The notes under the pieces were generated by a model, which saw only the letters and a program-made list of their open reading frames with translations, was not told where the DNA came from and did no database searches. This document shows positions 487 through 59,791 of a stretch of 64,000 bases of DNA, piece by piece. How positions within the stretch are numbered: position 1 is the stretch's first letter; every line of letters begins with the position of its first letter. Source of the DNA: Auanema rhodensis (taxonomy: Eukaryota; Animalia; Nematoda); contig OZ059896.1 in NCBI GenBank assembly GCA_964057225.1, positions 8,246,001 through 8,310,000 of the forward strand. The letters run 5' to 3'. The position numbers and the translations under genes were made by a program.

Positions 487-2297
487 ATGGCATGCTTCCG
501 TGGAACTGTTATTACTGGTTTTGAGGATGTTGCCAAGCAGGAGGTTAATAAGATGGGTATTCGGTCATCTTGTATTAGAGGAGCTGTGTGTTTTAATGCA
601 GAAATCGAGTTTATTCCTCAGGTCTGAGCTCGTCTGTTGCGTAATGTTTTTGACATCCTTCAGTGTTTACAATTGAGATCAATTGATAACTTGTTTGCCG
701 TGTTATATGAGAATCCTATTTCAGAATTACAGTCTCTGGATACTGAGGTAAAGGTTATTAAACAATAAGTTATTGTACGCGAAAAAAGTAAATTCCTTTT
801 CCTTTTTTTTGCATTTTATTATGAAGTTCTTGAAGAAGAAAAGTAAAATTTTGATACTTGATATGGTGTAGTATACTATACTTATATTGTGAAAAAGCAT
901 AGTTCTTGTTTGAAATTTTCATCCCTAAAATTTAAAACTAGCTTTGATAAAATTTCCTTGGATTTGGGCAATTTGATTAGCTCTACTTAGCTTCAAAAGT
1001 TTCAATTCAACCATTGATTTTCTGTGGGGAAATATCTCTCATATTAAAGGAAGCTCTAAATCAAATTAAATTGACAACCGAATATGTGAATTGGTCTCTG
1101 GGTATTAAATGCTGGCAAACAGCTTTTGCACGAAAAATTGCTGGAGGTCCTGAGGGTTTGGAGGTAAAGCAATTTCTAATTAGATGGTTTCTAATATTTG
1201 TTTGAAAGGAAAACATGCGGAAATATATTAATACCGGGATACCAACGGTTTCTGATGAAAACTCTCCAAGATTTAGGTTCTTTGTCGATTTCCAAGTTTA
1301 ATTAAACTTTCGTAATGAACCAATTCAGAGTAACTTGTAACCGAGCAGGAGATAAAAATCAACATAAGTTCTCATCAATGGATGCAGCCCGAGTAATGGG
1401 TGCTAAATTGAATAACATGTTTGGTTGGATACCAGATATGAAACACTTTGACATTGAAGTTATCCTGAATATTCGTTCAGAAATGGTTAGGTTTTTTTTA
1501 TTCTATAACATAACATATAAATTTCTGGTGTTCGTTATGATAGCTCTGAATTCGGATTCATTATTTCGTAGAAACATTGTTGCTTTTGGTCCAACTACAA
1601 TGCGCTCTACAATGTGCTACTGTATGGTTTCTCTTTGTAAACCTCAAAGAAGTTTCTTTCATCATAAGGAAACGTAAAATGCATTATTTTTCAGATCAAT
1701 TAATATTAGATCCAATGTGTGGAGGAGGGTCAATTCCCATAGAAGGCAGTTTAGCATTTCCTGAAACAATTTTTGTGGGTGGTGACCATCATGACAAAGC
1801 CATGGAGCGTTGCTACGAAAACTCAAGAGTATGTATCATCCAAAGCATTTGATAAAGGCGGTTTCAGAACTTGACCGGTAAACCTGATTTTTTGAAATGG
1901 GATGCTTTGAACTTACCGTTACTGGATGGAAGTATTGATGCAATTGTAACAGATTTGCCGTAAGTTATTTTTCCTATATTTTGGAAATTCCTACAAATCT
2001 GTAAAGGTAATAGCTATTTAGTTTTGGGAAAAAACTTGGCTCTACAATTGATAACAGAATTATTTATCCAAAGCTTCTGTTGGAGTGGCATAGAGTTGTA
2101 CACAAGGGGGGTCGAATTGTTGTCATGACTCATGATAAAAGAAGTCTAGGTTTGAATTTATTCATATATATATGTTTTAAAAATCATCTTCAGAAAATTC
2201 TTTGCGTTCATTAGAAGGAAAATTTAAAATAATTAATAAGCTTGCATGTAATCAAGGTGGACTGACAACAATCTGTCTTGTTTTACAAACGTTGTAG
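487..2297 (+). CDS. THUMPD3: THUMP-domain tRNA (guanine-N2) methyltransferase, THUMPD3/Trm14-like (about 10 exons)
   Basis: Hand-spliced protein: MACFRGTVITGFEDVAKQEV...LRSIDNLF...FRVTCNRAGDKNQHKFSSMDAARVMG...SLFRRNIVAFGPTTMRSTMCY...ILDPMCGGGSIPIEG (SAM-binding)...IDAIVTDLPFGKKLGS. Stop TAG at 2295-2297. Confidence 0.92.
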
Positions 2298-12406: not shown

Positions 12407-15400
12407 TTGAAGATATTCGTTTTAATCTGAAATAGCATTTTTGTGAATCAATAAAAATAATATTCAAAAACAAATGAGAAATCTGTGTATATCCTATGAA
12501 ATACACAAACGAACATACAATATCGAAAATATTTTTGAACGGAAAGAAAATATTAAGAATAAGGTATAGAAGAATAAACGAAGGTGAAACAAGTAGACTG
12601 ACAAAGAAAGAGAGAAGGGTGTTAAATCATGTATCGGTTAAGCAATATACGTTCACACCTATTAACGAATACATTACACAGCAGGTAGTAATTCGTTTTC
12701 CTTTTCCATACCTCTATCTGCATATCCTCTTTCGTTCTCCTTGAAGTCAACGTCATCACTCGCTCATTTCTCTCTTCTCCACCTTATTCTCATCTTTTTC
12801 AGACTCATCTGAATTTTGTTATTTGGCCTTTATGCTACTTTGCAAATCACATACGACATATCTTGTGTGATGAAGGTTATTTCTACTCTAAAACATCATA
12901 AACTATGGTAAGGATTACGGTAGCGGCTGTTTCGTGTTGCGATATGATCGACCCAGAGCCATATTAAGAAAAAGATGTCCGTTTCTTTGACTATAGACTG
13001 CTCAGTGGGTAGCTGGATATATAGTAGATACAAGAACAAATACGTGTAATAAGCAATTTGAGAGAAATATATTGTCAGTTATAGATAGAAAATACAAAAG
13101 AAGAACTTTGGTGGCCTGAGAGAACGGGAAAATAATGTATGCATCACATGTTTCTGAGAAAATATGCTAGGAAAGGAATCAATTGTTAAAAATTTTGCGT
13201 ATTTCGGTGAAATATCAGGTGGTGGCTGAGTATCAAGCAAATTGATCTTCATCTGATTCTATTATCAGTATCATCTGCTTCATCTTCACACCTTCTCATA
13301 GTGGAGAAGGATTAAACGTCAAACTTAGCTGCTGACCTTTCAATCTGCCATCTGACCTTATTGTTTCAAGATACTTTTCGCTGTAGGAGACTGCAAAAGA
13401 TGTTTAAAATACATGGTACATGTAGTGGATTAGTAGATTATTAAGCAGGTGCCAGAATTATGAAGAGAAAGATAGGCGTATATCAAGAAGAAGCAGATGT
13501 ATTGGCTTCGGACGTATTACGCCATTTTGATTTTTGAAAACAATGATGATGACAACCTATTATCCTGGTTACACAATATAATATTGTTGCAGAGACTGAT
13601 CAGCATAAAGCAAATGAAGCTTAGTGAAGTAATTTAACTATAACAGTTGATATACAATATATTAAAATATAGTTAAATTATAAAATATATTAATGATGGT
13701 CGGGTATTGTTGAAATAAGTAATTCGTTATAGAGATGAATGAAAGCCACTAGAAATGATTCGTATGAGAGTAATAATAAGTTGAAGGTTATATGATTCAT
13801 TCTCCGGATGGAAAACTAAAAGATTGTATCTTGAAAGATGATTTCTACAAAGGATTTGACCGCCGGCAGCTGACAGCCGAAATGAAGCCGGATGTTTGAC
13901 CATCCTCATGGGAGACGACTATGTGATGTTGCCGAATAAATAAAATTGGATCAAGTAGAAATTAATAACTGTTCTATCAAATGTATTTAAAATATTAATA
14001 AGATAAAATGATATAAGTAAAATATGAAATACTCAAACGAATGATTATAATATTAACGTATATGCTAGAACTTATAGTAACCGAATGCTAATAGTAGACT
14101 ATTTCTATGTTTATAAATATATAATCAATGATTTATCTACAAAATCATTCAGCATAATCTTCACAGAAAAAGAAACTTTAAAAATCTCATATATGTTCAA
14201 ATACATGATCACCAAACAGCTAAGAGATGCCTATAAATTTGAAGATTTACGAATAGTAAGTGAATTCTTCTCATTTCTAAAGCTCACACCTTCCCGAGTG
14301 CATAATGAATTAGATAGAAGATGATGATCATAAATATACGAATCTATATGTTTATCGGGTTTTCGGGTTTTCCAGGTCATTACTATGCACATAAACAATG
14401 GAAAATATTTCTAAAAGCTTATTATGAAAACGGTAGATAACCTGAGCAATACTAATATCTTTTCATCTGAATAAATGATTTAATTATTTTGATTTGCAAG
14501 AGAATAAAGATAAATCGTGAACTCAACAGATTGGTGTACGGTATTTAGACTAGTTGCCATACGTTTTTCATTGTCAAGTATATATTTTTTGATAACTAAT
14601 ATTTCATTTATTCATTATTTAACTATGACATAATAATTAAAGTCACGAGTTTTTTTGGATATGCATATTTGAGTGAATAATATTATTCAATGTCTTCTAA
14701 AAGAGGACGAAAAGTGAAAAAAAAGCAATTTTGAGTGGCAATAAGTAGACAGGCGGACAAATCGCAATGTACAGCCATTAACAGTATGAGGAAAGAAAGC
14801 ATCATCTGGTTAAGTGGACAAGAATTGCCTATTTGTATGATTCCATAGAGCAACAGGCACACATGGAGCTCATCAAGATTTGAATTGAACAAAAGGCTAA
14901 CCGCATGAAGCATCGTGTTCATGGGTATAGTCAATTGTAATTCAGAAGTCTAGATCTATCCTCCCTTGAGGAAACAAAGATACAGAGGAATAGGAGTTAA
15001 GAAAATACTTTCTTCGAAGGATAATATAATAATTAAGAGGTTGGATTCGCAAGAGGTAAATAATATTAGAAGACTAATTGAAGAAAGTTGCAAGTAAATT
15101 AGATAAATTTATTCGAACAGAAGATTTGTTGGTAGAACTGATCTTCGTCAGTTTCAATGTTTGAGAGTGGTATGAATATCAAAAATGCCGAGTTCATCGG
15201 CATCTACTACAAGAAAATAAGAAAGATCTCATTACAATGACAGATTTTTAGCTGATTTTCGGTTAAATCTTTAGACACCCTGCGGCGTCTGTTTACAATA
15301 AAAGGCTCGGATTGTCTGAACAGGCAAGGCTTTGTTATATAAAATACAAAAGGATTGGCTGATTTGATACTAATAATAAATATGAAATGTTTTATAAGTC

Positions 15401-16750: not shown

Positions 16751-17963
16751 ATGGATGGAATGATTAAGCAATCAGTTTCAAACGAGAGCCTTAATTCTTC
16801 AGGATCTATTGATCTTGAACGCTCCACGTGGTAAAGTTTAATAAGCTCATGCACGTTGACTTTTTTCTTAAAGGACATCATCGCTTTCATATAATAAAGA
16901 AAATCAAAAGCTAAATTTTGAAATCCAATGTATTCCTGAGGAAGGACCTGAATCCACTTTCAAGCCCAACAAAGTAAGTCATTTTTAAATTTATAACATT
17001 TCACTTGTATCATAGAATTGGAACTTCTGTGCAGATGTAACATTAAGAGGTTATGCAGATGGTAAAATTTTGTTTACACTTGATCTACCGGTGAGTTTTG
17101 TTCTCTTCAACATTGCTAAATATTATGAACATTGCAGAAAACTCATTTTACAAGTGAGAAAAAAACGCACTCTTCCCTGGTTGAAAATGTGAAACTTAAT
17201 TCATCTATCACTTGTTCCGTTATAATCATAATAACATCTGTATCTGGCTTAAGGTTAAGAGAACCCTTTTCCTGCAATATGAGATTTATTTTGCAGTAGA
17301 TCCAGGCCATTAGATTATACAAAGTTGGAGGATATGATTGGTTCAGATTTGGCCATAAAATGCAAAGACGGTGTAACCGCTTTCCTCCACAGAGCGGTAA
17401 TACTTACCATTCGATATTTTAACAAAAACAAATTTAGGTTGCTAATGAAAATAGCGGATATTTTAATGAAACTTGCCTACAATTCAATGTAATTAATTCT
17501 GATTACAATTATAAAGATATGTTCAAGTTGCTTTTGGATTGTTGGTATTCAGATGATTTTGAAATCAATGGTAACTCCTTCAAAATAATGATTATCATAA
17601 ATGTTTATTTTCATTTAGAAGCTAACGTGCTACTTCTTAATGAACTGTCTAAATACTATCAAGATATAAAGTTGCTGAATCTTTGCCACGAATATTGTTT
17701 AAACTATTCTGGTACAAAGTTGTCTTCAATGGAAAAAATAAAAGTTTTACTTTTGGAAAATGATGATGCTGTGTCGGTTAAAATCTATAGCGTAAGTTGA
17801 TTCTCGTATTTAAATGATTTGAATACAAAACTTATTTTAGACACATTTAATTAAAATCGCGGAAGTCAGAGCTTATTTAGAGAAATTTAAAGATTCTGAG
17901 GAGTTTGATAGATTAGAAGACAAGAAAAAATTAGTTATATATGAATGTATGTATAAAAAATAA
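16751..17963 (+). CDS. Divergent MATH-like plus BTB/POZ-domain protein (8 exons)
   Basis: Beta-rich N-terminal half (FEIQC...WNFCADVTL...FT), then BTB-like SDLAIKCKDGVTAFLHRAVANENSGYF...FKLLLDCWYS...LLLNELSKYYQDIKLLNLCHEY. Stop at 17961-17963. Confidence 0.7.
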
Positions 17964-18074
17964 ATTCCTTGTTCTTTCGTTGTGTTATATTACATTTATA
18001 TTCACTTGTTCAATCAGTTTATTACTTATAAGTTCTTAGATTCCAAATGTATAATCTTATTTTTTTATTTCTTG

Positions 18075-19197
18075 ATGCTGAAAACGATCTGTCTATTTTT
18101 GAGCCCCCAGAGGGATGCTAACAGTGATTCTGTGATACCTTCGCAACCTGTAACAATAGGACGATTTACATAGTTTGGTTATATGTATTATTTCTTTTTA
18201 TTATTTAAATATTGAAGCTATCTATCATTCCGCGCTGATGCTAACTTAGGAACAAATGTTGATTCCCGCTCAGTATTTATAGACGTTAATTGTGAGTGCT
18301 TCATAGAAAGCAATCGCGATTGGTCTAGCACTATATCTCTGAATTGTATGGTCAATAGTTTGAAGAAAATGGTATTTTTAAAATTATATTCAGTAACTGA
18401 AGCATGTTTTTAGCCTGCGTATCAGAACGAAGTCACATTTACAAACGAGAAAAAAGTATATAGCATAAATATCGGCACAATGGGTGAATTTTTATTATTA
18501 CCTAGTGCTGACTTTGAGTTCGATATAAGCTTGTTACAAACAACTGGGGTGATGTAAGTGTTGTGAGAATTCTAAAATAATATTTACGATATTTAGTTTA
18601 TCTACACATAACTTTCGTGAAATGGGATACATCGACGACATCTGTATAAAAGTTGGAAGCGAAGATATATCTTTGCATGCTAATAAGAGAGTCCGTATTT
18701 CCATATCTGAGGCACTATGAAATTATTACTATTATTTACAGTTCCTGTCTCTCTTCTCGCAAAAGTTGTCGGAGGTAAGTAATTTGCCTAATGAAAATCC
18801 CTACCATGTATATGAAGTCTTGGAATATCTTTATATCAGAAAATCTCAAATAACTTGTAAGTTTTTTCATTATTTTTATTCTGTTAACGTATGCTATTTA
18901 GCTAAGAACATTGATCACATACTATCCTTTTCCAACACTTACAAAATCAATTATTTATTAGACCTGTGTGAAAAGTTTTTATGTGAACAATTGAAAACAT
19001 GCAGAGATAACGCCGCTATCTTTGGAATAATAGAAAAAAGCTGTAATTATGAGCTTACTAATGTTCGTATAGCTGCTGTAGACCAACTTGCCAACCAACA
19101 AGTATTTTGCGATTTTTTGTTATCTTCAGAGTACAATCGAATAAATGATAAACATAAATTGGCAATAAACACGCAAGGATTAATGAAATTGTCTTAA
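18075..19197 (+). CDS. Second divergent MATH-like plus BTB/POZ-domain protein (6 exons)
   Basis: VFIDVNCEC...DWSSTISL...TFT, then DDICIKVGSEDISLHANKRFLSLFSQKL...VLEYLY...ITSKNIDHILSFSNTYKINYLLDLCEKFL. The start codon is uncertain. Confidence 0.72.
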
Positions 19198-19786
19198 GCA
19201 TGTTGTAGTTGTTATTGTACTCCAAAGGTGGATTTCGAATGTCTTTGTATAAATAAATATTTTTTAAATGTATGTTGGTACATGTTTCTAGTAAAGTACG
19301 GTTACAAGATGATATGAAAAGTTGGGAAAGATATTGATAGTGCCTAAAGTCTTGTTTTATCAAACATTTCCCTGACCGCGTGGTTTCCGTTTTCCTTTCA
19401 ACGAATATAGTTTTATTAGCTTATTAAAGCCAGCTGACGATATTTCATCTAGTTTGTTGAAGGGTATTAACTAATTGATTAGATATCTTTTAATGTCCTT
19501 CTTAGGCCTCCATATATATTAATAATAACGTTAAAGAAGTGTTTAAGTTCCGAAATCTTCACTAATACTAAGTTTTCCTTTTCAAACTTGCTATTTTACT
19601 GACCATCTTCTTCCAAACAATCAATTGTTATTACTTTTGAGCTACCATATAAGTACTATGTACCTTGATGCATGATCATTTTTGATTAGAAAATTGATAA
19701 ACAATTCATCTACATTGATCGCCATCCATGCATTTATACATTATTCTTTTCTATTTATGCTTAAATTAGTGTGTTATATTCAGATA

Positions 19787-21182
19787 ATGTTTGGCACAAA
19801 CGCTTGGCTAAAAGATGGTATGGTATTATCAAAAGAACAGAAACAGTTCTACGAAACAAATGGCTTCATCGTTATAAGAAACTGCGTTCCAAAGTTTGAA
19901 CTAACTAAATATCAACGACGATTCAGAGTTCGTGTTATTTTTTGTAAAAAATAAATCATTTTTCCTTCAGGATATTTGTGAAAAAAAAGATGTCCCACCA
20001 GACATGACTGTGATGAAAGATGTTTCAATTGCCAAGTCTGAATTTCTTTCTGGCGAAAAAGTAATTGTTCATGTTCCGATAACAAAAATATTAATTTGAT
20101 TAAGGCTGTAACTAAAGTTCAAGATTTTCAAAATGATCCAGTGCTCTTTGATTATTGTAAATTCCCAACGGTAATTGTTCAGATGAAATCAATGATAATG
20201 TTTACTCATAGATTGTGAACGTTGTGAAGGATTTGATTGGAACTCGAAGCTCGAACTTGATGGCAATGCATACAATGCTAATAAATAAGCCTCCTGATAA
20301 TGGTTTAGTTTGAACACTTCACTCTCAGACTCATAAGGTTACAGGCAAATTGACATCCCGTCATCCAATGCATCAGGATCTACACTATTTTCCTTTTCGA
20401 CCCGCTGATTATATCTGTTGTGCATGGACTGCAATGGAAAAAGTAAAATACTGGGATGATTTAAGTTAATAATATCATATTAAGTTTTAGATTAATAGAG
20501 CCAATGGGTGCTTAGTCGTAGTACCTGGAACTCATAAAGGAACTTTGTTGCCACATGAATATCCAAACTGGCAGGTACTACAATGTATTAATTAAAATAT
20601 TAAATATCTAGGAATGCTGATCGAGAACTATATTTATAATAATTTCTTACCATACACAGAAGCTTTAATAATGTTTAATTGTTTTTAAGGGAGGCGTAAA
20701 TAAGGCTTATCACGGAATTCAAAATTACGATCCTAATTCAGCAAGAGTTCATCTAGAAATGGAAGCTGGAGATACCGTATTTTTCCATCCAATTTTGATT
20801 CATGGCTCAGGAGCCAATAGAACAGAAGGTTGAAAGTTAGCCTCTTCATTTTATCAATCCTTTTCAGGTTTTCGAAAGGCTATATCATGTCACTATGCCA
20901 ACGATGATATGTGTAAATATGTGGATGTTCAAGGAACAACCCAAGAAGTAAATATACTTTCAATCTACTATCCATACTTGTAATTATTTTCAGGAACTTT
21001 CAAAAGAAATAATCCAAATCGCAAAAACTAAATTCTTTAAAAAATATGGTCACAAAGATGATAATGAGATTAACATTGATTATGCTGTACGTTTATTTAC
21101 AAATTATAAATAATAATTTACGTTTAAGGATATTTGGCGACTTCGTGCTCGTGAGGTTAATGGTAGTCGAGCCAACTTATAA
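19787..21182 (+). CDS. PHYH: Phytanoyl-CoA dioxygenase (peroxisomal, Fe(II)/2-oxoglutarate), 10 exons
   Basis: [32 protein letters not shown] (HxD motif), [44 protein letters not shown]; C-terminus ...NGSRANL*. Confidence 0.96.
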
Positions 21183-21257
21183 ATGTGTAAATATAATGTT
21201 TCTTATACATAATGCAAACCAATTAGTCAATAAACGAGTTTTACTTATACCGCCATT

Positions 21258-24040
21258 TTACAGCTTGCTTTTTGTATTCAAAAAAGTTGACAAGTCTTTC
21301 CACCAACTAGGACGAAACTTTTCAAATTCATTTTTACGGAATTCCGTCATAAGATGGTCATATGCCCTGAAAAATCAATTACCCCCCATCACGTAATAAA
21401 AAATCAAACCTTCCATCCTTAAATCCTAAAGTGGAATGAAGCAAGAAATCATGTGGAGCGATAGCATCAACAATTGAGATAGCGTCTGGTGCTAAAGAAT
21501 CCTGAGCAGATTTGCGCAGCTTTTGTAGTGTTGTTCCAAAATTGGGACCAGAGCAATATTCTCCTTGAAAGAAGAAAAGAATTATAAACAAGTACATTTT
21601 AAATTACCTATATACAGATAAGATAAATGTTTTTCTAAAACAAACAAGCTGTATAACAAACAAATGTTCTCTAACACCTAAACAGATATTACATTAAATA
21701 TCAGAATACTATTAGACCTTTTTGAGTGAAGAATTCTCCAAATCTACAATGAAATCATAAAACCAACTGATTACCGTATGCTCAGCATACGCGATAGAAA
21801 GAGGATGAGCACCATATATCTTTGAATTAAAAATTATTATTTTTTATTTAAATAATATACCTGTGATAAATTTCTAGATTCAAATTGCCCATTTGGTTTT
21901 TCAGAATCGAGAAGGCTGTTAGTTTGGTTGAGTAAATACTGAATAAGCCATTTATATGCCTTCAAAATATCTGAAAAACAAACAGATGATATCAGAATAG
22001 CTTATTACCTTACCTTCAATAGGTTTATCAGTAAAGCTGGAGAAAGTTGAGGTTGGCGTATTAAGGAACGAATATGTGGACATAGGGCTCGAACAATTTT
22101 TAGTTTTTGCCTTAAATCATTGTTAACAATACATGTTTCCAAGTGGAAATATTTTACTATAGAGGATTCTCCTCTACAAAATATTACAATTTAATTTAAT
22201 TTACCTTGGCAACGAGTATATTACTAGTTTGTTGAAGTAAAATATTATTTTCACCCTCAAAAGTTTGGGATGGATCATATGAATCACGTAGCTCATTTAA
22301 TCGCGACGAATACAAAAAACTATAAGTCATAACAATATTTTTCAAAATTTAAATTCACATACCCGTGACCGCCACAGGCTCTTCTAGCTTCCCCCAACGC
22401 TTCAATACCTAACCAAGTAGATATAGGTTTAGCAGCTGAAGATAAAGCGTGTACTTCTTTAGAAAATTCAGCCTGAAATATGTTTAAAAATAGAAAGCAA
22501 ATTGAAAATTGTTCGAACTAAGTCATCAGACTTTTCACCAGTAATCATACGAATCATATATTCTTTAAAATATTCCAAAAATCTGTAAAAAAAAAAGTAA
22601 AAACAAGCAAAAAACCTGATAAATTACCTCTTGTGAAAAATCCTGAGTGCGATATGAGACGCCAAGTACGGAAACAATCTATGTTGTTGAAGTGGATAAT
22701 CAAGGACAGGAATTTCTTCTTAAATATTAAAATTATAGAACATTGTATATAAAATGTAAGAAACCTTTCCCAGGAGGGCCAAATTGGCGACGAGTGGCAC
22801 TGTATCGGATAGCAATGGTAGATGCTAAGGCGCAAGCTTGCAGACCTTTACCAATAATTCCAATTCTAATGTGAAAGAATTATATTTAACAATTCGGTGC
22901 AGATAGTTGAGACCTCCCAATAGACAAAGACCCCAAGCTAACAGACTGCCTCTCACTAGTAGATTTGTAGCTGCTAATGTAATTACCATCTTTTGTCACT
23001 TCAAGACCCTTATTTAGTAATGAATCTAAATGAGCCCGATGATTCTAAATTTAGCATGTTTTATGTCTATCTAAAACTTTCTTCATTACCTTGAATTCCA
23101 TCCAACCGTTTTCCACAGAATTCCATGCTCCGGGCTTCTCCCCCATATCACCAATAGTAATGCCCGGAAGAGTAGCGAATGTTTCAAGATTTCGCACTTG
23201 GAGAACGAAAGCATGTAATCCTTTAGAAACACCCCCAATAATCAACTGAGCAAAAACTACAGCATGGGTGGCAGAAAATGCTTAAAATATAACTTGAAAC
23301 CCATACTGCCTGCTTGTAACCTAAATTTCCAGCCCACACTTTTATGGCTCCTTCATTAGGTGAATTAAAAACAAATTCTCCATTGTCGTAAGTAGCAGTA
23401 GTTTGAATCATTTGGGTATTTGAGCCATGACTTAGTTCAGTTAAACAGAAGCAGCCTACGATCTGCAGACTACAACGTTGAAAATATTACGTTTTTTTGC
23501 AACCTGGTTATTTCTAGCTTGTTCAAGAATAGCTTGATGCCGTTCAGTTCCCATTGAAATAATAGCGGAAGTAAAAACCTATCATAAAATTAGTTAACTA
23601 CAGATCACAAAAGGCATATAGTCACATTACTGTGCAACATGAGACGTGCAGCTAAACCTTGATCATACAATTCAAGTACTTCAGATAAAGCTAAAAACCG
23701 TTCACTTTCCATCATCGGCTGAAATGATACTAAATATACTTGCATATAAAGATTTTTCAAAATCACATCTTCAATAAAGTTATATTCGATTAATCGCTTC
23801 CATCTTTTGTGGGTTATTTCTCTAGCTTCTTCAAGAGATGGTTTTACAAAGTCCCTTTTGAATAATGGATCTTTCGCTAATACCGTAGTAAATTCATCCT
23901 ACAAATGTTTTGAAAAAACTCTTAGGTTGATTACATACCATAAGTTTGACGTGCTCATCTCCTTCTACCAATAGTTTAAATTTTTTAGGACAAATCGAGC
24001 TTTTCTCACGATAAGCATCCAAAGGAGAATTAACGGACAT
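21258..24040 (-). CDS. acox-3: Peroxisomal acyl-CoA oxidase 3 (pristanoyl-CoA oxidase type), about 18 exons
   Basis: [16 protein letters not shown] (ACOX3-type N-terminus), [47 protein letters not shown], catalytic TFEGEN; ends ...NTKSKL* (PTS1). Confidence 0.93.
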
Positions 24041-24908
24041 CACTCTTAAGTGAGAAAAAGTATTATAAGAGTAAAATATTAAATTAAAATGGATTAAAAT
24101 GCTAAAAAAAAATACTAAATTGAGTTAGACATAATGATGCTTAATGACACCAAACACAATATATTGTTGTCTCCATAGATGGTTAAATATAAGGGTACAT
24201 TGTCGAAAGTTCAATCGATTGTTTGATATCAGATGATTGCCACGAAAGAAGAACCAACTATTTCATTATTTAAAGTGGGCATAATAATAAAATTTTAGCC
24301 AATTATTAAATAGCTCAATTTTATGAAATGGATATAAATTTATTTAATTCAGAAATATAATATTTGTATAGATATTGTTAACAATATAAAGAAATTTATA
24401 CCTTCTAAAAGTCATAGGAGTTTTGGTTACAGTTGATAAACATTTTAGCATCTTCTAAGAAAATTAGTCAATTACTACTTGAAATTTGCTATATGGTAAT
24501 CAAACAATAAGCTAAGCTATATAGCCCAAATATCATACATAATAATTATAAAAATTTGTACAAAAATAGAATTGTATAATAAAGTATTAGCATCTAAAAT
24601 GTTTCTGCTTTTCATCTCAGATTTTACCATTGTTAAAACTCATAGCTGCAAATTTATACAAAATTTTTTATTTAAACTCAAATCATCATACCACTGATTT
24701 CTGCCATTTATGGTAATCTACAATACAATAAATACGTTTAGAAGACGTTTTCCTAGAGTTTGGTATGTAATTGCGACCACGATGGCGGTAAAAATAAATT
24801 TTTGATTTTTGATAGTTCCGAGTTCAATTTTACAGAATTCGTACTATCACCAGCCAAGTGAGCTCCTTTTATGATAGTCTCTTAATATTGAAGCTAAATT
24901 TTTAGAAT

Positions 24909-26522
24909 ATGAGTCATAATGAAGAGCAGAAGTTTGTTTTGTCTGGAGAACAAGTTCGTCAGAGGGTGTTTGATAAACGTAATTCTCAGGAAAACCATAT
25001 TGTTGCATTGAAGTAACTTATAGATTATTAACATTAATTCAATATTTTTTAAAGTTCTATGGATGATGCTGAAAAAGAAGAAATGGGTTATTCTATCTAT
25101 CTAGAACTGTCGGAAAAAGTGAGAATTTTGTTATAAATTCATGTAATTTTGAAAAAAAATTTTCGTCAGACTCGGCCTAAAAATTTGTACCAACATATGG
25201 AAAAGTTCGAATATCATACCTATATGGTTCGATCAGATAAATTCTGGAATACATTTTGCACGCTAAGGGAAAATTATGAAAAGGAAAAAAGCATTTCCAA
25301 AATAAGTAAGCTTCTTCAGAAAAGTTATATCTAACATTATGTAGGCTTACTTCGCTCCGTGCTCAATGGACATAAGTTGTCAGAATGCAATGCCAAGCCA
25401 CGTCGTGTTTTGTTTGATGAAGATGTTCAAGACAATGCGAGTTGCGATAATATGCTTCCACTTAATAGTTTAACAGAGCAACGTGAAACTCATGCTCATA
25501 ATTTAGCATCTAATGAATATCCGACACAAGAAATACAAAAAATACAAGAACACAAAAGCGAAAAGGGAGAATCTATGTACATAGGTATTTTATTTTTCTC
25601 TTATTTTGTGTTCATTGCATATCTAAGGTTTTCCCAAAGTTCACGAGAAGGTATCAAGTCGCAAAGACGCTGAAATAATCGCAAAGTGTTCAAAATCTCA
25701 TCCCAGGTAACATATATAATTGTTTAAATTTCAATTAGCATTTTTATTTTAAGTGATAATGTAATCATTAATGAAGAACAGCATGACGCACCTGACAATG
25801 ACAGTTCCAAGAATATTGTGAATTTTCAATATTTTTTCATATATATGTTATAGATTATAGGTGGTTTCAAAGATGGAAGCAAGGAAACAAGCACTCCTTG
25901 CACAGTCGGCGAAGAGACGAGAAGTGTCTAGTTTAAAGGTATAATAATTAGACAATGAAGTATAAACTTGTTATTAGGGTGTACAAGATCCTAAACCTTC
26001 TGCTCGTAAAGTAACGAATAAGACTAATAGAAATGTAATACAAAATGCTTTGAAATTTTGTGTTTTCCCAGGAACAGTAAATGAAATGACAAGAAAAAAG
26101 GTATTTTTGCATAAATTATTTCATCTAACATCTATTATAGATTTTGCTTGAAATCGATAATTCGTTTTCCAAACATTTTCTCGTTCTATTCCGTGATAAA
26201 GGTCTTCAGTATAGGGGAATTTATACTTGGGATGAGGTAATTGTTTCAATTGTCAGTATCTTTCGATATATAATCATTTTTAGAAATGTGATGTTGTTGA
26301 AAAAATGTGTGGCTCAGGACCTTCAGTATGCAGCCAGGACATGATAAATTTAATGTTTAAGTAAGCGGAAAAGCTAAGTTCAAAATATCAGTTATTTTCA
26401 GATATGATTATGGAGGGAAAAAGTTTTCATCCATACCCGCAAAACAATTTGATTCTATTTATGATGGCTTTACCATTCAGGATAACTATTGGATGAAAAA
26501 ACCAAATGTTACCAGAAATTGA
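24909..26522 (+). CDS. Short CKK-domain (CAMSAP/patronin-like) microtubule-binding protein, about 400 aa, 11 exons
   Basis: C-terminal KTNRNVIQNALKFCVFPGTVNE...KHFLVLFRDKGLQYRGIY...GSGP...MFKYDYGGKKFSSIPAK....DGFTIQDNYW is a CKK domain, preceded by the coiled-coil remnant KMEARKQALLAQSAKRRE. Confidence 0.85.
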
Positions 26523-26682
26523 ATAAAGAGTCAAGTGATTACCTTTTTTTTTAGTTTTCATTGTGTTATTAAGAATAAAGTTTTATCTCTAGCCTGATAT
26601 CAAATATTTTGTTTGAGTAAATGAAATCATTTTCACGTGCTTCACGTCAAATCTAGTATTTTATTTTCGAATGAAAAGTTTA

Positions 26683-27574
26683 ATGAAGCAGTTTATTCCA
26701 ATTTTTCTGATTATTTTCACCGATTCGGTCTGGTCTGCATATACAAATCATCAAGCAAGCTTTTTGATTTGGTTTTCCATATTATTTTTAATTTTTAGTT
26801 CGCAATTTCTTTTGATTTTAAATCAACAGTATTTACTGGGAAATTGGCTATTACCGATTTTGTTTTTTTCTTTTACAATTCTGACGGGTTAATCGAAGTA
26901 AGTAGATACCATATTGTTTATATGCGATTTAGAGTCGATTAAGATATGGAATCTGCATAAACGATTGTCCTCTTCATAACTTCACTTCAAATAGAATTGT
27001 AGGTTTTTTCTTTTGTTCAGAACATATTAATCGATTGCAGCTCGCTAAAAGTTATGGAGATCTGAGTGGATTTGATGGAGCAGCAAGCGATCGTCTCACT
27101 ACAGGAGCGACAATTACTTTCTTTCCAAAAGTTCAAGGCCCTGCAGTGGATCAGCACTTTTACCCTGAATCCTACAAAGAGATTAGTAGAACGGTTTGAT
27201 TCACATATTTAGCTTTCATAAAGATTGGACCACAGGGTGAACTCAACGATTGGTTCTATAGAGATGAAGCATTATTATTTTCATCTCTCAAAGTAGAGGT
27301 TTATTTCGCTGACTCGAACACTTGGAAAACTATTTTGTGAGCTGATTAAAATTTTATTTGACCAATATTTTTTTAGCCAATGGAAAAATGAATTGGAGGG
27401 TTCTCTCATAGAGCCAAAACATGTTATCTCCGCTCCAGGAATATACAGGTTCAATATTCAGTAACTTTCGCCAATAATTTAAGCAACAAACTTTTCAGAT
27501 TTGTGCCAAATGGCACTCTTGGATACATCAAATCATTATTCTATTACCCAAAAACAAATATGATTATGACATAA
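26683..27574 (+). CDS. Uncharacterised secreted protein (about 210 aa, 7 exons)
   Basis: Signal peptide MKQFIPIFLIIFTDS|FAISF followed by continuous phase-compatible exons ending ...FVPNGTLGYIKSLFYYPKTNMIMT*; N-glycosylation sequons NFT and NGT. Confidence 0.7.
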
Positions 27575-28018
27575 TTATTAGAAAAAAAAGCTGTATTCAT
27601 TGAAAATTATTTTTGTTTAGTATTTTACATGCTTATTTAATAAATGTAATTATTGCTATCTTATACACCCAACGACTTTCATGCGTACTTACTCTTAAAT
27701 GGTTTTACAGTTTATCAAGAAATATGAAACACAGTTTTTTTTTATCTTTCAATGACAGCATGTATTCCCGGTCTTGACGCGATTTTCCTGAGAGTATGGG
27801 AGAACAACGATAGCTTGTTAGAAACCGGGCGGCGGGCCTTCATATTCCATAACCTTAAGCAAAATTAACTATGCTTAATAAATATCAATTGATTAATTTG
27901 TGAATTAAAAATTATTCAGTTATTAAGAGAACAGTTAACGTTTAAAATATATGTATACTATTATTTTGTTCTTAAAGCTATCACTTTTTCCTTCAGACAA
28001 ATAAACGTTTTCTAGGTA

Positions 28019-30135
<2,117 letters not shown>

Positions 30136-31185
30136 GTTTGAGTTCATATTGTAGTCACCGTAATACGCGGAATATATAGATCTAAAGTTTCGCTTATATA
30201 CTATTATCTGTTCATACTTCATCAATTTCCCCAGTGGTATTAGTTTAGCTAGGAATTTAATTCTTAATTATACGAGCGAGCTCAATAAATTAATAATAAG
30301 GAACTGAAACAGAATTTTTATTTTAATACAATGGTATTTTTCGAATTTGCATGACCCTGCTGTGTTCTGTTCTAATCATGTGGTTAAAACTGAAGTACTC
30401 TATCAACGTTTTGGTTATATTTGATTGTATTGTTCTAAAGTAACGTCCTTGAGATGGATGATATATCATGATTAGTGAGTGAAAGCTTCTGAGAACAACA
30501 CTCGTATTTCAAAGTTAAAGACGGTTCTATCATGATGATAATGCTAAGTTTTAAACAATGATTGTGATCGTTCTGAACTGCCGTTCCTTGTATTGATTGT
30601 TAATGAAAGAAAAATCAGGTAATTCGGGAGGTGTCTCAGCTGATTCGTAAGTAGTCGGTATGGACGGCGGCCAAGGAAAAAAATCGTTTTTAACTATTGT
30701 TGATGCTTCCCATCGAGTTTAGAATAGACAGAAGAACGAGGTGAAGGAGGGGTAGAAATTATGAGAATAGGTTGTATGAGTAGAAGACTAGGTCTGGTGA
30801 GAACGAGGTGAATTGATTCCATTTGGGGAGACATCGTCAACCACAACGTTGCCGACGCAGTACATGTGTAAGAAACTAGCTCTTTCGACCTATGTCGTTC
30901 TTTCGTCCCTACCCCTTCGTCGTTGTGATCATCGTTCCGTCCGTTTGCTTCCTAAGAGGCAAGGGGCATTGTGTTGGCGCTGACTGCTTGCGATGGTAGT
31001 TGCCTCTTCTCTGATGTCTTTTACTTCTTATTTTTGTCGACGGCAATTCTTAATTATCAAAGTCGTCATTAAATGAATTTCTCTTTCTATCTTTCTTTGT
31101 TATTTACTCTACGTCATAGGCTAACCACGCATATACATATCGGACCACGTGAAGAACAGTAGTTTCAAGCAATCATCACGTCAAT

Positions 31186-52361: not shown

Positions 52362-59791
<7,430 letters not shown>

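What the first reader, a model, noticed from the sequence alone, without database searches (positions are those of the whole stretch)
19787..24040. Tail-to-tail PHYH and ACOX3: a candidate two-gene peroxisomal branched-chain fatty-acid cluster
Seen in the sequence: PHYH (+) and ACOX3 (-) converge with only 75 nt between their stops (21182 and 21258). Established knowledge: PHYH starts alpha-oxidation of phytanoyl-CoA towards pristanic acid, and ACOX3-type oxidases catalyse the first beta-oxidation step of pristanoyl-CoA; C. elegans acox-3 is also implicated in ascaroside side-chain shortening. Adjacent non-homologous enzymes from sequential steps of one pathway are rare in animals. Inference: a co-regulated alpha/beta-oxidation module for methyl-branched dietary lipids or pheromone tailoring.
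Basis: partly seen in the sequence, partly recalled or inferred. Interest (0 to 1): 0.7.

Follow-up and report, generated by a model that had tools for sequence, protein, structure and literature searches.

The report
Adjacent PHYH and ACOX-3 worm genes
Two ordinary peroxisomal fat-breakdown genes (PHYH and acox-3) really do sit tail to tail in this nematode, but only the Auanema lineage shares the arrangement, so it looks like an accident of gene order, not a purpose-built gene cluster.

Summary
A 10-exon PHYH gene (+, CDS 19787-21182, 311 aa, ends -ANL) and a 19-exon ACOX-3 gene (-, CDS 21258-24451, 680 aa, ends -SKL) converge with exactly 75 nt between their stop codons. Spliced cDNA contigs from four runs of one study confirm every intron. 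They show an SL1 leader on PHYH and run unbroken across the spacer, so the two 3' ends overlap or abut.

Both identities are right. PHYH keeps its iron and 2-oxoglutarate ligands, and human PHYH is its only solved-structure match. The oxidase falls inside the metazoan ACOX3 clade with C. elegans ACOX-3.

The cluster reading is not supported. The pair recurs only in Auanema sp. JU1783, the closest relative found, inside a 23-24 kb stretch that is collinear throughout. No PHYH lies within 10 kb of ACOX-3 where that much flank was available in Caenorhabditis remanei, Diploscapter, Nippostrongylus, Mesorhabditis, Pristionchus, Steinernema or Toxocara. The genes are convergent and have separate 5' ends, so they share neither a promoter nor an operon. 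Co-expression could not be measured.

Verdict: real genes and real adjacency, most likely a lineage-limited chance juxtaposition. Low interest.

The parts
19782..19783 (+). SL1 trans-splice acceptor (AG) of PHYH; the 5' UTR is only 3 nt (19784-19786)
   Evidence: Loose ends CAAGTTTG and CCAAGTTTG lie before 19782 in runs X3 and X4. With the genomic AG they give the last 11 nt of SL1.
19787..21182 (+). PHYH (phytanoyl-CoA 2-hydroxylase orthologue) CDS, 311 aa, C-terminus -RANL. Ten exons: 19787-19927, 19971-20060, 20105-20170, 20212-20302, 20345-20442, 20491-20574, 20690-20828, 20868-20947, 20994-21086, 21129-21182
   Evidence: Pfam PhyH matches on four exons. Human PHYH 2a1x is the only PDB match. 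All 9 introns are GT..AG joints in the cDNA contigs. The model translates without an internal stop.
21183..21257 (.). 75-nt spacer between the two stop codons, transcribed throughout
   Evidence: cDNA contigs are continuous over 21129-21365 in all four runs. The spacer is not conserved in sequence with Auanema, whose spacer is 62 nt.
21229..21234 (+). AATAAA, the likely poly(A) signal of PHYH, which would put its 3' end next to or inside the ACOX-3 stop codon region
   Evidence: Read directly from the sequence. The actual cleavage site was not mapped.
21258..24451 (-). ACOX-3 (acyl-CoA oxidase 3 orthologue) CDS, long isoform 680 aa, C-terminus -SKL. Nineteen exons: 24402-24451, 23939-24044, 23767-23898, 23626-23718, 23504-23578, 23321-23462, 23090-23280, 22914-23044, 22765-22865, 22628-22718, 22519-22582, 22363-22472, 22205-22319, 22014-22110, 21861-21970, 21718-21819, 21608-21677, 21410-21563, 21258-21366
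   Evidence: Pfam Acyl-CoA_dh_M, ACOX_C_alpha1 and ACOX. Joints and contig lengths. 71% identity to Auanema ACOX-3 and 58% to the cluster representative (P0156) that holds C. elegans ACOX-3. Tree placement.
24402..24454 (-). It follows an acceptor-like ttttcttag. The ATG at 24451 adds MLKCLSTVTKTPMTFRRV ahead of the Met at 24040
   Evidence: A 52-nt loose end of the contigs in X1 and X2 maps to 24405-24434 and onward. Auanema has a matching long isoform, P0268, 20 aa longer than P0166.
24045..24401 (-). ACOX-3 intron 1, 357 nt, the only long intron of the pair
17438..19197 (+). Context: BTB-domain gene(s) upstream of PHYH, in the same order as in Auanema
   Evidence: Pfam BTB. Two BTB genes lie next to PhyH in L004. 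Collinearity by tblastx.
24739..30164 (+). Context: CAMSAP_CKK-type gene and a pyridine-nucleotide disulphide oxidoreductase gene (dihydrolipoamide dehydrogenase-like) beyond ACOX-3, in the same order as in Auanema
   Evidence: Pfam Pyr_redox_dim, L004 annotation, tblastx collinearity.

Best explanation
These are two ordinary single-copy peroxisomal enzyme genes of a rhabditid nematode related to Auanema. One is the PHYH orthologue, which performs the alpha-hydroxylation step of 3-methyl-branched acyl-CoA alpha-oxidation. In nematode fashion it appears to be targeted by a C-terminal PTS1-like -ANL instead of the N-terminal PTS2 of mammals. The other is the acox-3 orthologue, the first enzyme of a peroxisomal beta-oxidation cycle, ending in -SKL. 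They lie tail to tail in a compact genome, 75 nt apart, so their 3' UTRs overlap or abut. Each has its own 5' end. The juxtaposition arose in the lineage leading to Auanema and this species and has persisted as part of a larger block of conserved gene order. It is a by-product of genome rearrangement, not a selected, co-regulated metabolic cluster. Shown: gene structures, identities, catalytic residues, transcription across the spacer, and the phylogenetic distribution of the adjacency. Inferred: peroxisomal import, substrates, and the absence of selection on the adjacency.
For: Gene identities: Pfam. PHYH exons match only human PHYH in the PDB, with His175/Asp177/His264/Arg275 equivalents kept. 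ACOX sits in the metazoan ACOX3 clade (100*), the nematode clade (100*) and a clade-V group that holds C. elegans ACOX-3 (97*), apart from an ACOX1-type control. The GGHG and FEGEN motifs are kept. Transcription: spliced contigs with SL1, continuous across the spacer. Distribution: Auanema L004 has ACOX3(+) and PhyH(-) 62 nt apart, flanked by the same BTB, CAMSAP and Pyr_redox genes, and the whole 23 kb is collinear with window 10.4-34.9 kb. tblastn finds no PHYH similarity, even at E<=10, in the fetched flanks of ACOX-3 (up to 10 kb; about 1.1 kb upstream for Nippostrongylus L002 and Toxocara L010, which lie near contig ends) in Nippostrongylus, C. remanei, Mesorhabditis, Pristionchus, Steinernema, Toxocara and Diploscapter, or on two RNA contigs. 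The downstream neighbour differs in each lineage: a convergent P5A-ATPase in L001, a convergent 309-aa gene with no Pfam hit in C. remanei, and a same-strand RabGAP-TBC gene in Nippostrongylus. The spacer sequence is not conserved.
Against: The two enzymes do belong to consecutive peroxisomal pathways, so a functional link is plausible. The adjacency has survived while non-coding sequence diverged beyond alignment, at 71-82% protein identity. Only one ACOX-3 paralogue per species was examined in Pristionchus and Steinernema. No species between Auanema and the other Eurhabditis groups was sampled. Expression correlation was not measured.
Confidence: 0.8

Rival explanations
1. A selected two-gene metabolic module: adjacency is kept in the Auanema lineage because a shared chromatin domain or enhancer co-regulates alpha-oxidation and the following branched-chain beta-oxidation, or ascaroside tailoring.
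For: Both products are peroxisomal and act in consecutive pathways. The pair is kept in two species with 71-82% protein identity.
Against: The conservation cannot be told apart from that of all eight or so neighbouring genes. The pair is absent from seven other genera. The genes are convergent, with 5' ends 4.7 kb apart and no shared promoter. At least three enzymatic steps separate the two reactions (and general knowledge). No other pathway gene was noticed in the few neighbouring stretches scanned.
Confidence: 0.1
2. Antisense coupling: the overlapping convergent 3' UTRs form double-stranded RNA or cause transcriptional interference, so that expression of one gene modulates the other.
For: cDNA contigs are continuous across the 75-nt spacer in all four runs, so both strands' transcripts jointly cover it. 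The PHYH AATAAA sits 24 nt before the ACOX stop codon.
Against: Contigs are unstranded and cannot show true overlap, since read-through or trace pre-mRNA could bridge the gap. The spacer is not conserved with Auanema. The same kind of merged convergent contig occurs for ACOX-3 and an unrelated P5A-ATPase in another rhabditid, so such merging is commonplace in compact nematode genomes.
Confidence: 0.07
3. Assembly artefact or misjoin that places two unlinked genes together.
For: None found.
Against: Independent cDNA contigs bridge the junction with 0 mismatches. An independent genome assembly of Auanema sp. JU1783 has the same arrangement.
Confidence: 0.01

Closest known systems
C. elegans acox-3 (ACX3_CAEEL, Q20992) and metazoan ACOX3 (pristanoyl-CoA oxidase type)
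   Same: Same domain set, the same catalytic FEGEN glutamate motif and GGHG motif, and a C-terminal SKL. The oxidase groups with these proteins in the tree. It is 58% identical to the cluster representative (P0156) that holds C. elegans ACOX-3 and about 42-43% identical to non-nematode ACOX3.
   Different: It has an alternative first exon that adds a basic 18-aa N-terminal extension, as in the Auanema long isoform. Its substrate range is unknown. C. elegans ACOX-3 is documented on ascaroside side chains (PMC5986272), not on 2-methyl-branched acyl-CoAs.
Human PHYH (PDB 2a1x) and the C. elegans PHYH homologues ZK550.5/ZK550.6
   Same: PhyH fold signature. The HxD...H iron ligands and the 2-oxoglutarate arginine are kept, and the catalytic core exons align to human PHYH with few changes. 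The role in alpha-oxidation of beta-methyl fatty acids is proposed for the C. elegans homologues (PMC10876521).
   Different: There is no N-terminal PTS2 presequence. Instead the protein has a C-terminal -ANL, shared with Auanema, which fits the loss of the PTS2 pathway reported for C. elegans (PMC3178647 citing Motley 2000). It is a single gene here next to ACOX-3, whereas the C. elegans homologues carry neighbouring cosmid names.
Metabolic gene clusters of fungi and plants, and nematode operons
   Same: Physical adjacency of non-homologous genes with a shared metabolic context.
   Different: There are only two genes. They are convergent, not co-directional, so no polycistron is possible. The adjacency is not kept beyond background collinearity, and the two steps are not consecutive.

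Membership tests
PHYH (phytanoyl-CoA 2-hydroxylase, PhyH family PF05721) | PhyH domain detected | tested here: met
   Three exons match PF05721 above its cut-off, up to E 2.7e-12, in the correct order along the profile. A fourth, exon 1, matches weakly and below the cut-off (14 bits against 22).
PHYH (phytanoyl-CoA 2-hydroxylase, PhyH family PF05721) | Fe(II) ligands His-x-Asp...His and the 2-oxoglutarate-binding Arg (human H175, D177, H264, R275; residue roles from memory of the 2a1x structure paper) | tested here: met
   HQD at residue 139, IHGSG at 227 and GFRK at 237 align to the same positions of 2a1x.
PHYH (phytanoyl-CoA 2-hydroxylase, PhyH family PF05721) | Orthology to PHYH proper and not to PHYHD1 or other PhyH-family members | tested here: inconclusive
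   Human PHYH is the only PDB sequence matched by three exons (E 1.9e-20, 6.2e-16, 6.1e-07). No family tree was built because no full-length PHYH set could be fetched.
PHYH (phytanoyl-CoA 2-hydroxylase, PhyH family PF05721) | Peroxisomal location and phytanoyl-CoA hydroxylase activity | not testable with these tools
   The C-terminal -ANL is PTS1-like and is conserved in Auanema. This is inference only.
ACOX3 / nematode acox-3 | Acyl-CoA oxidase domain architecture (Acyl-CoA_dh_M, ACOX_C_alpha1, ACOX) | tested here: met
   with the domains in the right order along the gene.
ACOX3 / nematode acox-3 | Falls inside the ACOX3 clade, separate from ACOX1-type oxidases | tested here: met
   Quick ML tree with SH-aLRT support only (the careful search did not finish): ACOX3 clade 100*, nematode clade 100*, clade-V group with C. 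elegans ACOX-3 97*. The ACOX1-type control was verified against the PDB.
ACOX3 / nematode acox-3 | Catalytic glutamate (xEGEN motif) and GGHG motif | tested here: met
   GGHGF at residue 426 and TFEGEN at 449, as in C. elegans ACOX-3 and vertebrate ACOX3.
ACOX3 / nematode acox-3 | Activity on 2-methyl-branched (pristanoyl-type) acyl-CoA | not testable with these tools
The C. elegans data concern ascarosides.
Functional metabolic gene cluster | Adjacency conserved beyond background gene-order conservation | tested here: not met
   Adjacency appears only in Auanema, inside a fully collinear 23 kb. It is absent in seven other genera.
Functional metabolic gene cluster | Shared regulation (common promoter, operon or co-expression) | tested here: inconclusive
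   The genes are convergent with separate 5' ends, so there is no shared promoter or operon. Co-expression cannot be measured from contigs.

The most novel reading that the evidence does not exclude
In the Auanema lineage, PHYH and acox-3 became a genuine co-regulated pair. They would be coupled through a shared chromatin domain or their overlapping convergent 3' ends, to process methyl-branched lipids or pheromone side chains. That would be a rare animal example of a young two-gene catabolic cluster.
Probability: 0.07. Interest if true: 0.45.

Novelty: new member of a known kind. Interest (0 to 1): 0.15.

Why it matters
If the pair were a selected module, it would be one of very few non-homologous metabolic gene clusters in animals and a handle on branched-chain lipid or ascaroside metabolism. 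The evidence points the other way, so the practical value is mainly annotation. This report gives exact, transcript-supported models of PHYH and acox-3 in this genome, including a missed first exon. It also gives an example of a PTS2-to-PTS1 switch on PHYH, and a caution that same-pathway neighbours in compact nematode genomes need a synteny control before they are called clusters.

Tried and rejected
(1) The search for homologous proteins could not be used on single exons because of its length window. I searched one ACOX exon with the search of protein representatives and then used a full-length hit, P0003, as the query.

(2) P0006 and P0166 were not on record for the look-up of encoding contigs. 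The Auanema locus was reached through its longer isoform P0268.

(3) A first intron search that minimised intron number gave wrong, exon-skipping models. It was replaced by a search constrained by the contig record positions.

(4) The careful ML tree did not finish in time, so the quick tree is reported.

(5) A PDB search with the C-terminal ACOX exon found nothing.

(6) Literature searches found no report of PHYH/ACOX3 synteny or of a nematode peroxisomal gene cluster.

(7) Assembly artefact was rejected.

(8) A PHYH-family tree and a look from the PHYH side in other species were not possible.

The joined spliced proteins were never typed or sent to any database tool. Database searches were done exon by exon, by reference. 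The joined models were built only inside scripts from window.fa, for the length check, for local BLAST against already fetched sequences, and for the tree.
Full report
**What is there**

The window is AT-rich (about 30% G+C) and carries short-intron genes. Stop-free stretches on the + strand at 19787-21182 match Pfam PhyH on four exons, in profile order; three are above the cut-off and exon 1 is weak. Stretches on the - strand at 21258-24044 match Acyl-CoA_dh_M, ACOX_C_alpha1 and ACOX. The PHYH stop, TAA, is at 21180-21182. The oxidase stop is at 21258-21260. Exactly 75 nt lie between them.

**Transcript evidence**

Four runs of one study hold the stretch as contigs. The record only guesses that they are RNA. 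The contigs are spliced and carry a spliced leader, so they are cDNA-derived.

Laid on window:19600-24300 (4701 letters), each run gives one contig of about 3.0 kb with no mismatches:

- It skips 9 GT..AG introns in PHYH.
- It shows CT..AC joints, which are GT..AG on the - strand, in the oxidase.
- It is continuous over 21129-21365, across the spacer.
- In runs X3 and X4 the contig begins with CAAGTTTG or CCAAGTTTG before the genomic AG at 19782-19783. That is the 3' end of nematode SL1 (its sequence is established knowledge). PHYH is therefore SL1 trans-spliced 3 nt before its ATG, and the organism is a nematode.

Contigs are unstranded and have a single depth value. They show that the whole spacer is transcribed, so the two 3' UTRs overlap or abut, or read-through bridges them. 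They do not show a common transcript or any expression level.

**A missed exon**

In runs X1 and X2 the contig runs on for 52 letters beyond 24047. These letters map to 24405 onward. On the - strand this is an exon, 24402-24454, preceded by ttttcttag and followed by gtataa.

Eleven further joints inside the laid stretch were not listed. I solved them by enumerating GT..AG introns under the intron counts and summed lengths fixed by the contig record positions. The best-scoring solution gives 19 exons, 680 aa and one stop. Its spliced length from 19782 to 24047 is 3012 nt, identical to the contig. PHYH has 10 exons and 311 aa.

**Identity of PHYH**

Three exons match only human PHYH (2a1x) in the PDB, with E 1.9e-20, 6.2e-16 and 6.1e-07. 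The alignments keep the equivalents of HQD (His175/Asp177), IHGSG (His264) and GFRK (Arg275). The residue roles are from my memory of the structure paper.

The protein lacks the mammalian N-terminal PTS2 region and ends in -RANL. Auanema PHYH ends in the same -RANL. This fits the reported absence of the PTS2 pathway in C. elegans (PMC3178647 citing Motley et al. 2000). I could not build a PHYH-family tree, so orthology against PHYHD1 rests on the PDB result alone.

**Identity of the oxidase**

One exon, searched against 1.8 billion representative proteins, gave full-length relatives. A full-length hit used as the query returned nematode oxidases first, and then proteins that their sources name "peroxisomal acyl-coenzyme A oxidase 3" across Metazoa.

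The local model shows the following identities:

| Compared with | Identity |
|---|---|
| Auanema sp. JU1783 | 71% |
| Strongylids | 60-61% |
| Representative (P0156) of the 90% cluster that holds C. elegans ACOX-3 (Q20992) | 58% |
| Non-nematode ACOX3 | about 42-43% |

A quick ML tree (the careful search did not finish) gives these groupings:

- Window plus Auanema: 100*.
- A clade-V group that includes C. elegans ACOX-3: 97*.
- A nematode clade: 100*.
- The metazoan ACOX3 clade: 100*. It is separate from a control that I verified as ACOX1-type against the PDB.

The GGHG and FEGEN motifs and the C-terminal SKL are kept.

**Is the adjacency conserved?**

In Auanema sp. JU1783 (L004) the order is Pyr_redox gene, CAMSAP_CKK gene, ACOX3 (+), PhyH (-, 311 aa), BTB, BTB. 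ACOX3 and PhyH are 62 nt apart. tblastx shows that the whole 23-kb locus is collinear, in inverted orientation, with window 10.4-34.9 kb. PHYH has the same 10 exons at 82% identity. Introns and the spacer no longer align. The pair is therefore shared, but no more so than every other gene nearby.

Around ACOX-3 in seven other genera the annotated neighbours are unrelated genes, and tblastn with the PHYH model finds nothing even at E<=10. The same holds for two RNA contigs, L001 and L008. Flanks of up to 10 kb were fetched; the Nippostrongylus locus L002 and the Toxocara locus L010 have only about 1.1 kb upstream because they lie near contig ends. The seven genera are:

| Genus or species | Locus |
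|---|---|
| Nippostrongylus | L002 |
| C. remanei | L003 |
| Mesorhabditis | L005 |
| Pristionchus | L006 |
| Steinernema | L007 |
| Toxocara | L009, L010 |
| Diploscapter | L011 |

The downstream neighbour of ACOX-3 differs by lineage. In L001 the oxidase transcript is merged with a convergent P5A-ATPase. That shows that merged contigs of tail-to-tail genes are routine in these compact genomes.

On the tree, Auanema plus the window are one of three Eurhabditis branches. The two other branches and all outgroups lack the adjacency. A single recent gain is the most parsimonious reading.

**Mechanism and pathway logic**

The genes are convergent. Their 5' ends are 4.7 kb apart. PHYH has its own SL1 acceptor, and the oxidase has its own first exon. 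There is no shared promoter and no operon.

PHYH and ACOX3 are also not neighbouring steps. After hydroxylation come HACL-1 cleavage and aldehyde oxidation, and only then does the alpha-methyl acid enter beta-oxidation (PMC10876521). CoA re-activation and, for 2R isomers, racemisation also lie between the two enzymes; those two steps are from general knowledge.

C. elegans ACOX-3 is documented on ascaroside side chains together with ACOX-1.1 (PMC5986272). Activity on 2-methyl-branched substrates is known for rat pristanoyl-CoA oxidase (references listed in PMC7106852) but is untested in nematodes.

**Chance**

With assumed numbers of about 50 peroxisomal lipid genes among about 20,000 genes, the expected number of adjacent pairs is n(n-1)/G, or about 0.1 per genome for this one set. 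A reader scanning a whole genome for any same-pathway neighbours will meet several.

**Verdict**

The genes are real and well supported, and the adjacency is real. It is most likely a lineage-limited chance juxtaposition carried along in a collinear block (confidence 0.8). The selected-module reading (0.1) and the antisense-coupling reading (0.07) are not excluded, because expression was not measurable here.

Spliced proteins were never typed or sent to database tools. Searches were done exon by exon, by reference. The joined models exist only inside scripts built from window.fa.

Noticed in passing
window 24402-24454 (-); P0268 and P0166 of Auanema sp. JU1783: ACOX-3 has an alternative first exon that adds a short, basic, acid-free, Ser/Thr-rich N-terminal extension: 18 aa here and 20 aa (MKRFTGILKSQRLRYNSSAR) in the Auanema long isoform. 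A Pristionchus fissidentatus model (P0169) also has an arginine- and serine-rich N-terminal extension. It resembles a mitochondrial presequence on a protein that also ends in SKL, so dual targeting of one isoform is conceivable. In X3 and X4 the contigs stop at the exon-2 acceptor, which fits a branch between two 5' ends but does not prove one.
   Followed up: partly
window 21165-21182 (+); L004 about 13126-13145: PHYH ends in -RANL in both this species and Auanema and lacks the mammalian PTS2 presequence. This is an example of the nematode PTS2-to-PTS1 switch using a catalase-like ANL tripeptide.
   Followed up: partly
window 29019-29107 (+): ARAGORN calls an 89-nt 'tRNA-Pyl (cta)' here. The place lies inside a coding exon of the Pyr_redox (dihydrolipoamide dehydrogenase-like) gene that is 74% conserved at protein level with Auanema, so the call is probably a false positive.
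   Followed up: partly
window 10400-34900 against L004 1-23063: There is complete collinearity, in inverted orientation, of about 8 genes with Auanema sp. JU1783 contig CALQYR020007438.1. This places the window's organism as a relative of Auanema. Exons are 50-100% identical at protein level, and introns and spacers do not align.
   Followed up: yes
L001 13-5668 (Logan RNA contig, SRR33369742): In another rhabditid, the ACOX-3 transcript contig is fused tail to tail with a P5A-type ATPase transcript, with 154 nt between the CDS ends. Such merged convergent contigs seem common and should not be read as shared transcripts.
   Followed up: partly
window 52400-58100 (+) and 1300-1900 (+): Open stretches look like a plasma-membrane Ca2+-ATPase (P-type ATPase motifs such as DKTGTLT-type and [20 protein letters not shown]) and a THUMPD3-like methyltransferase. 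I did not examine them further.
   Followed up: no
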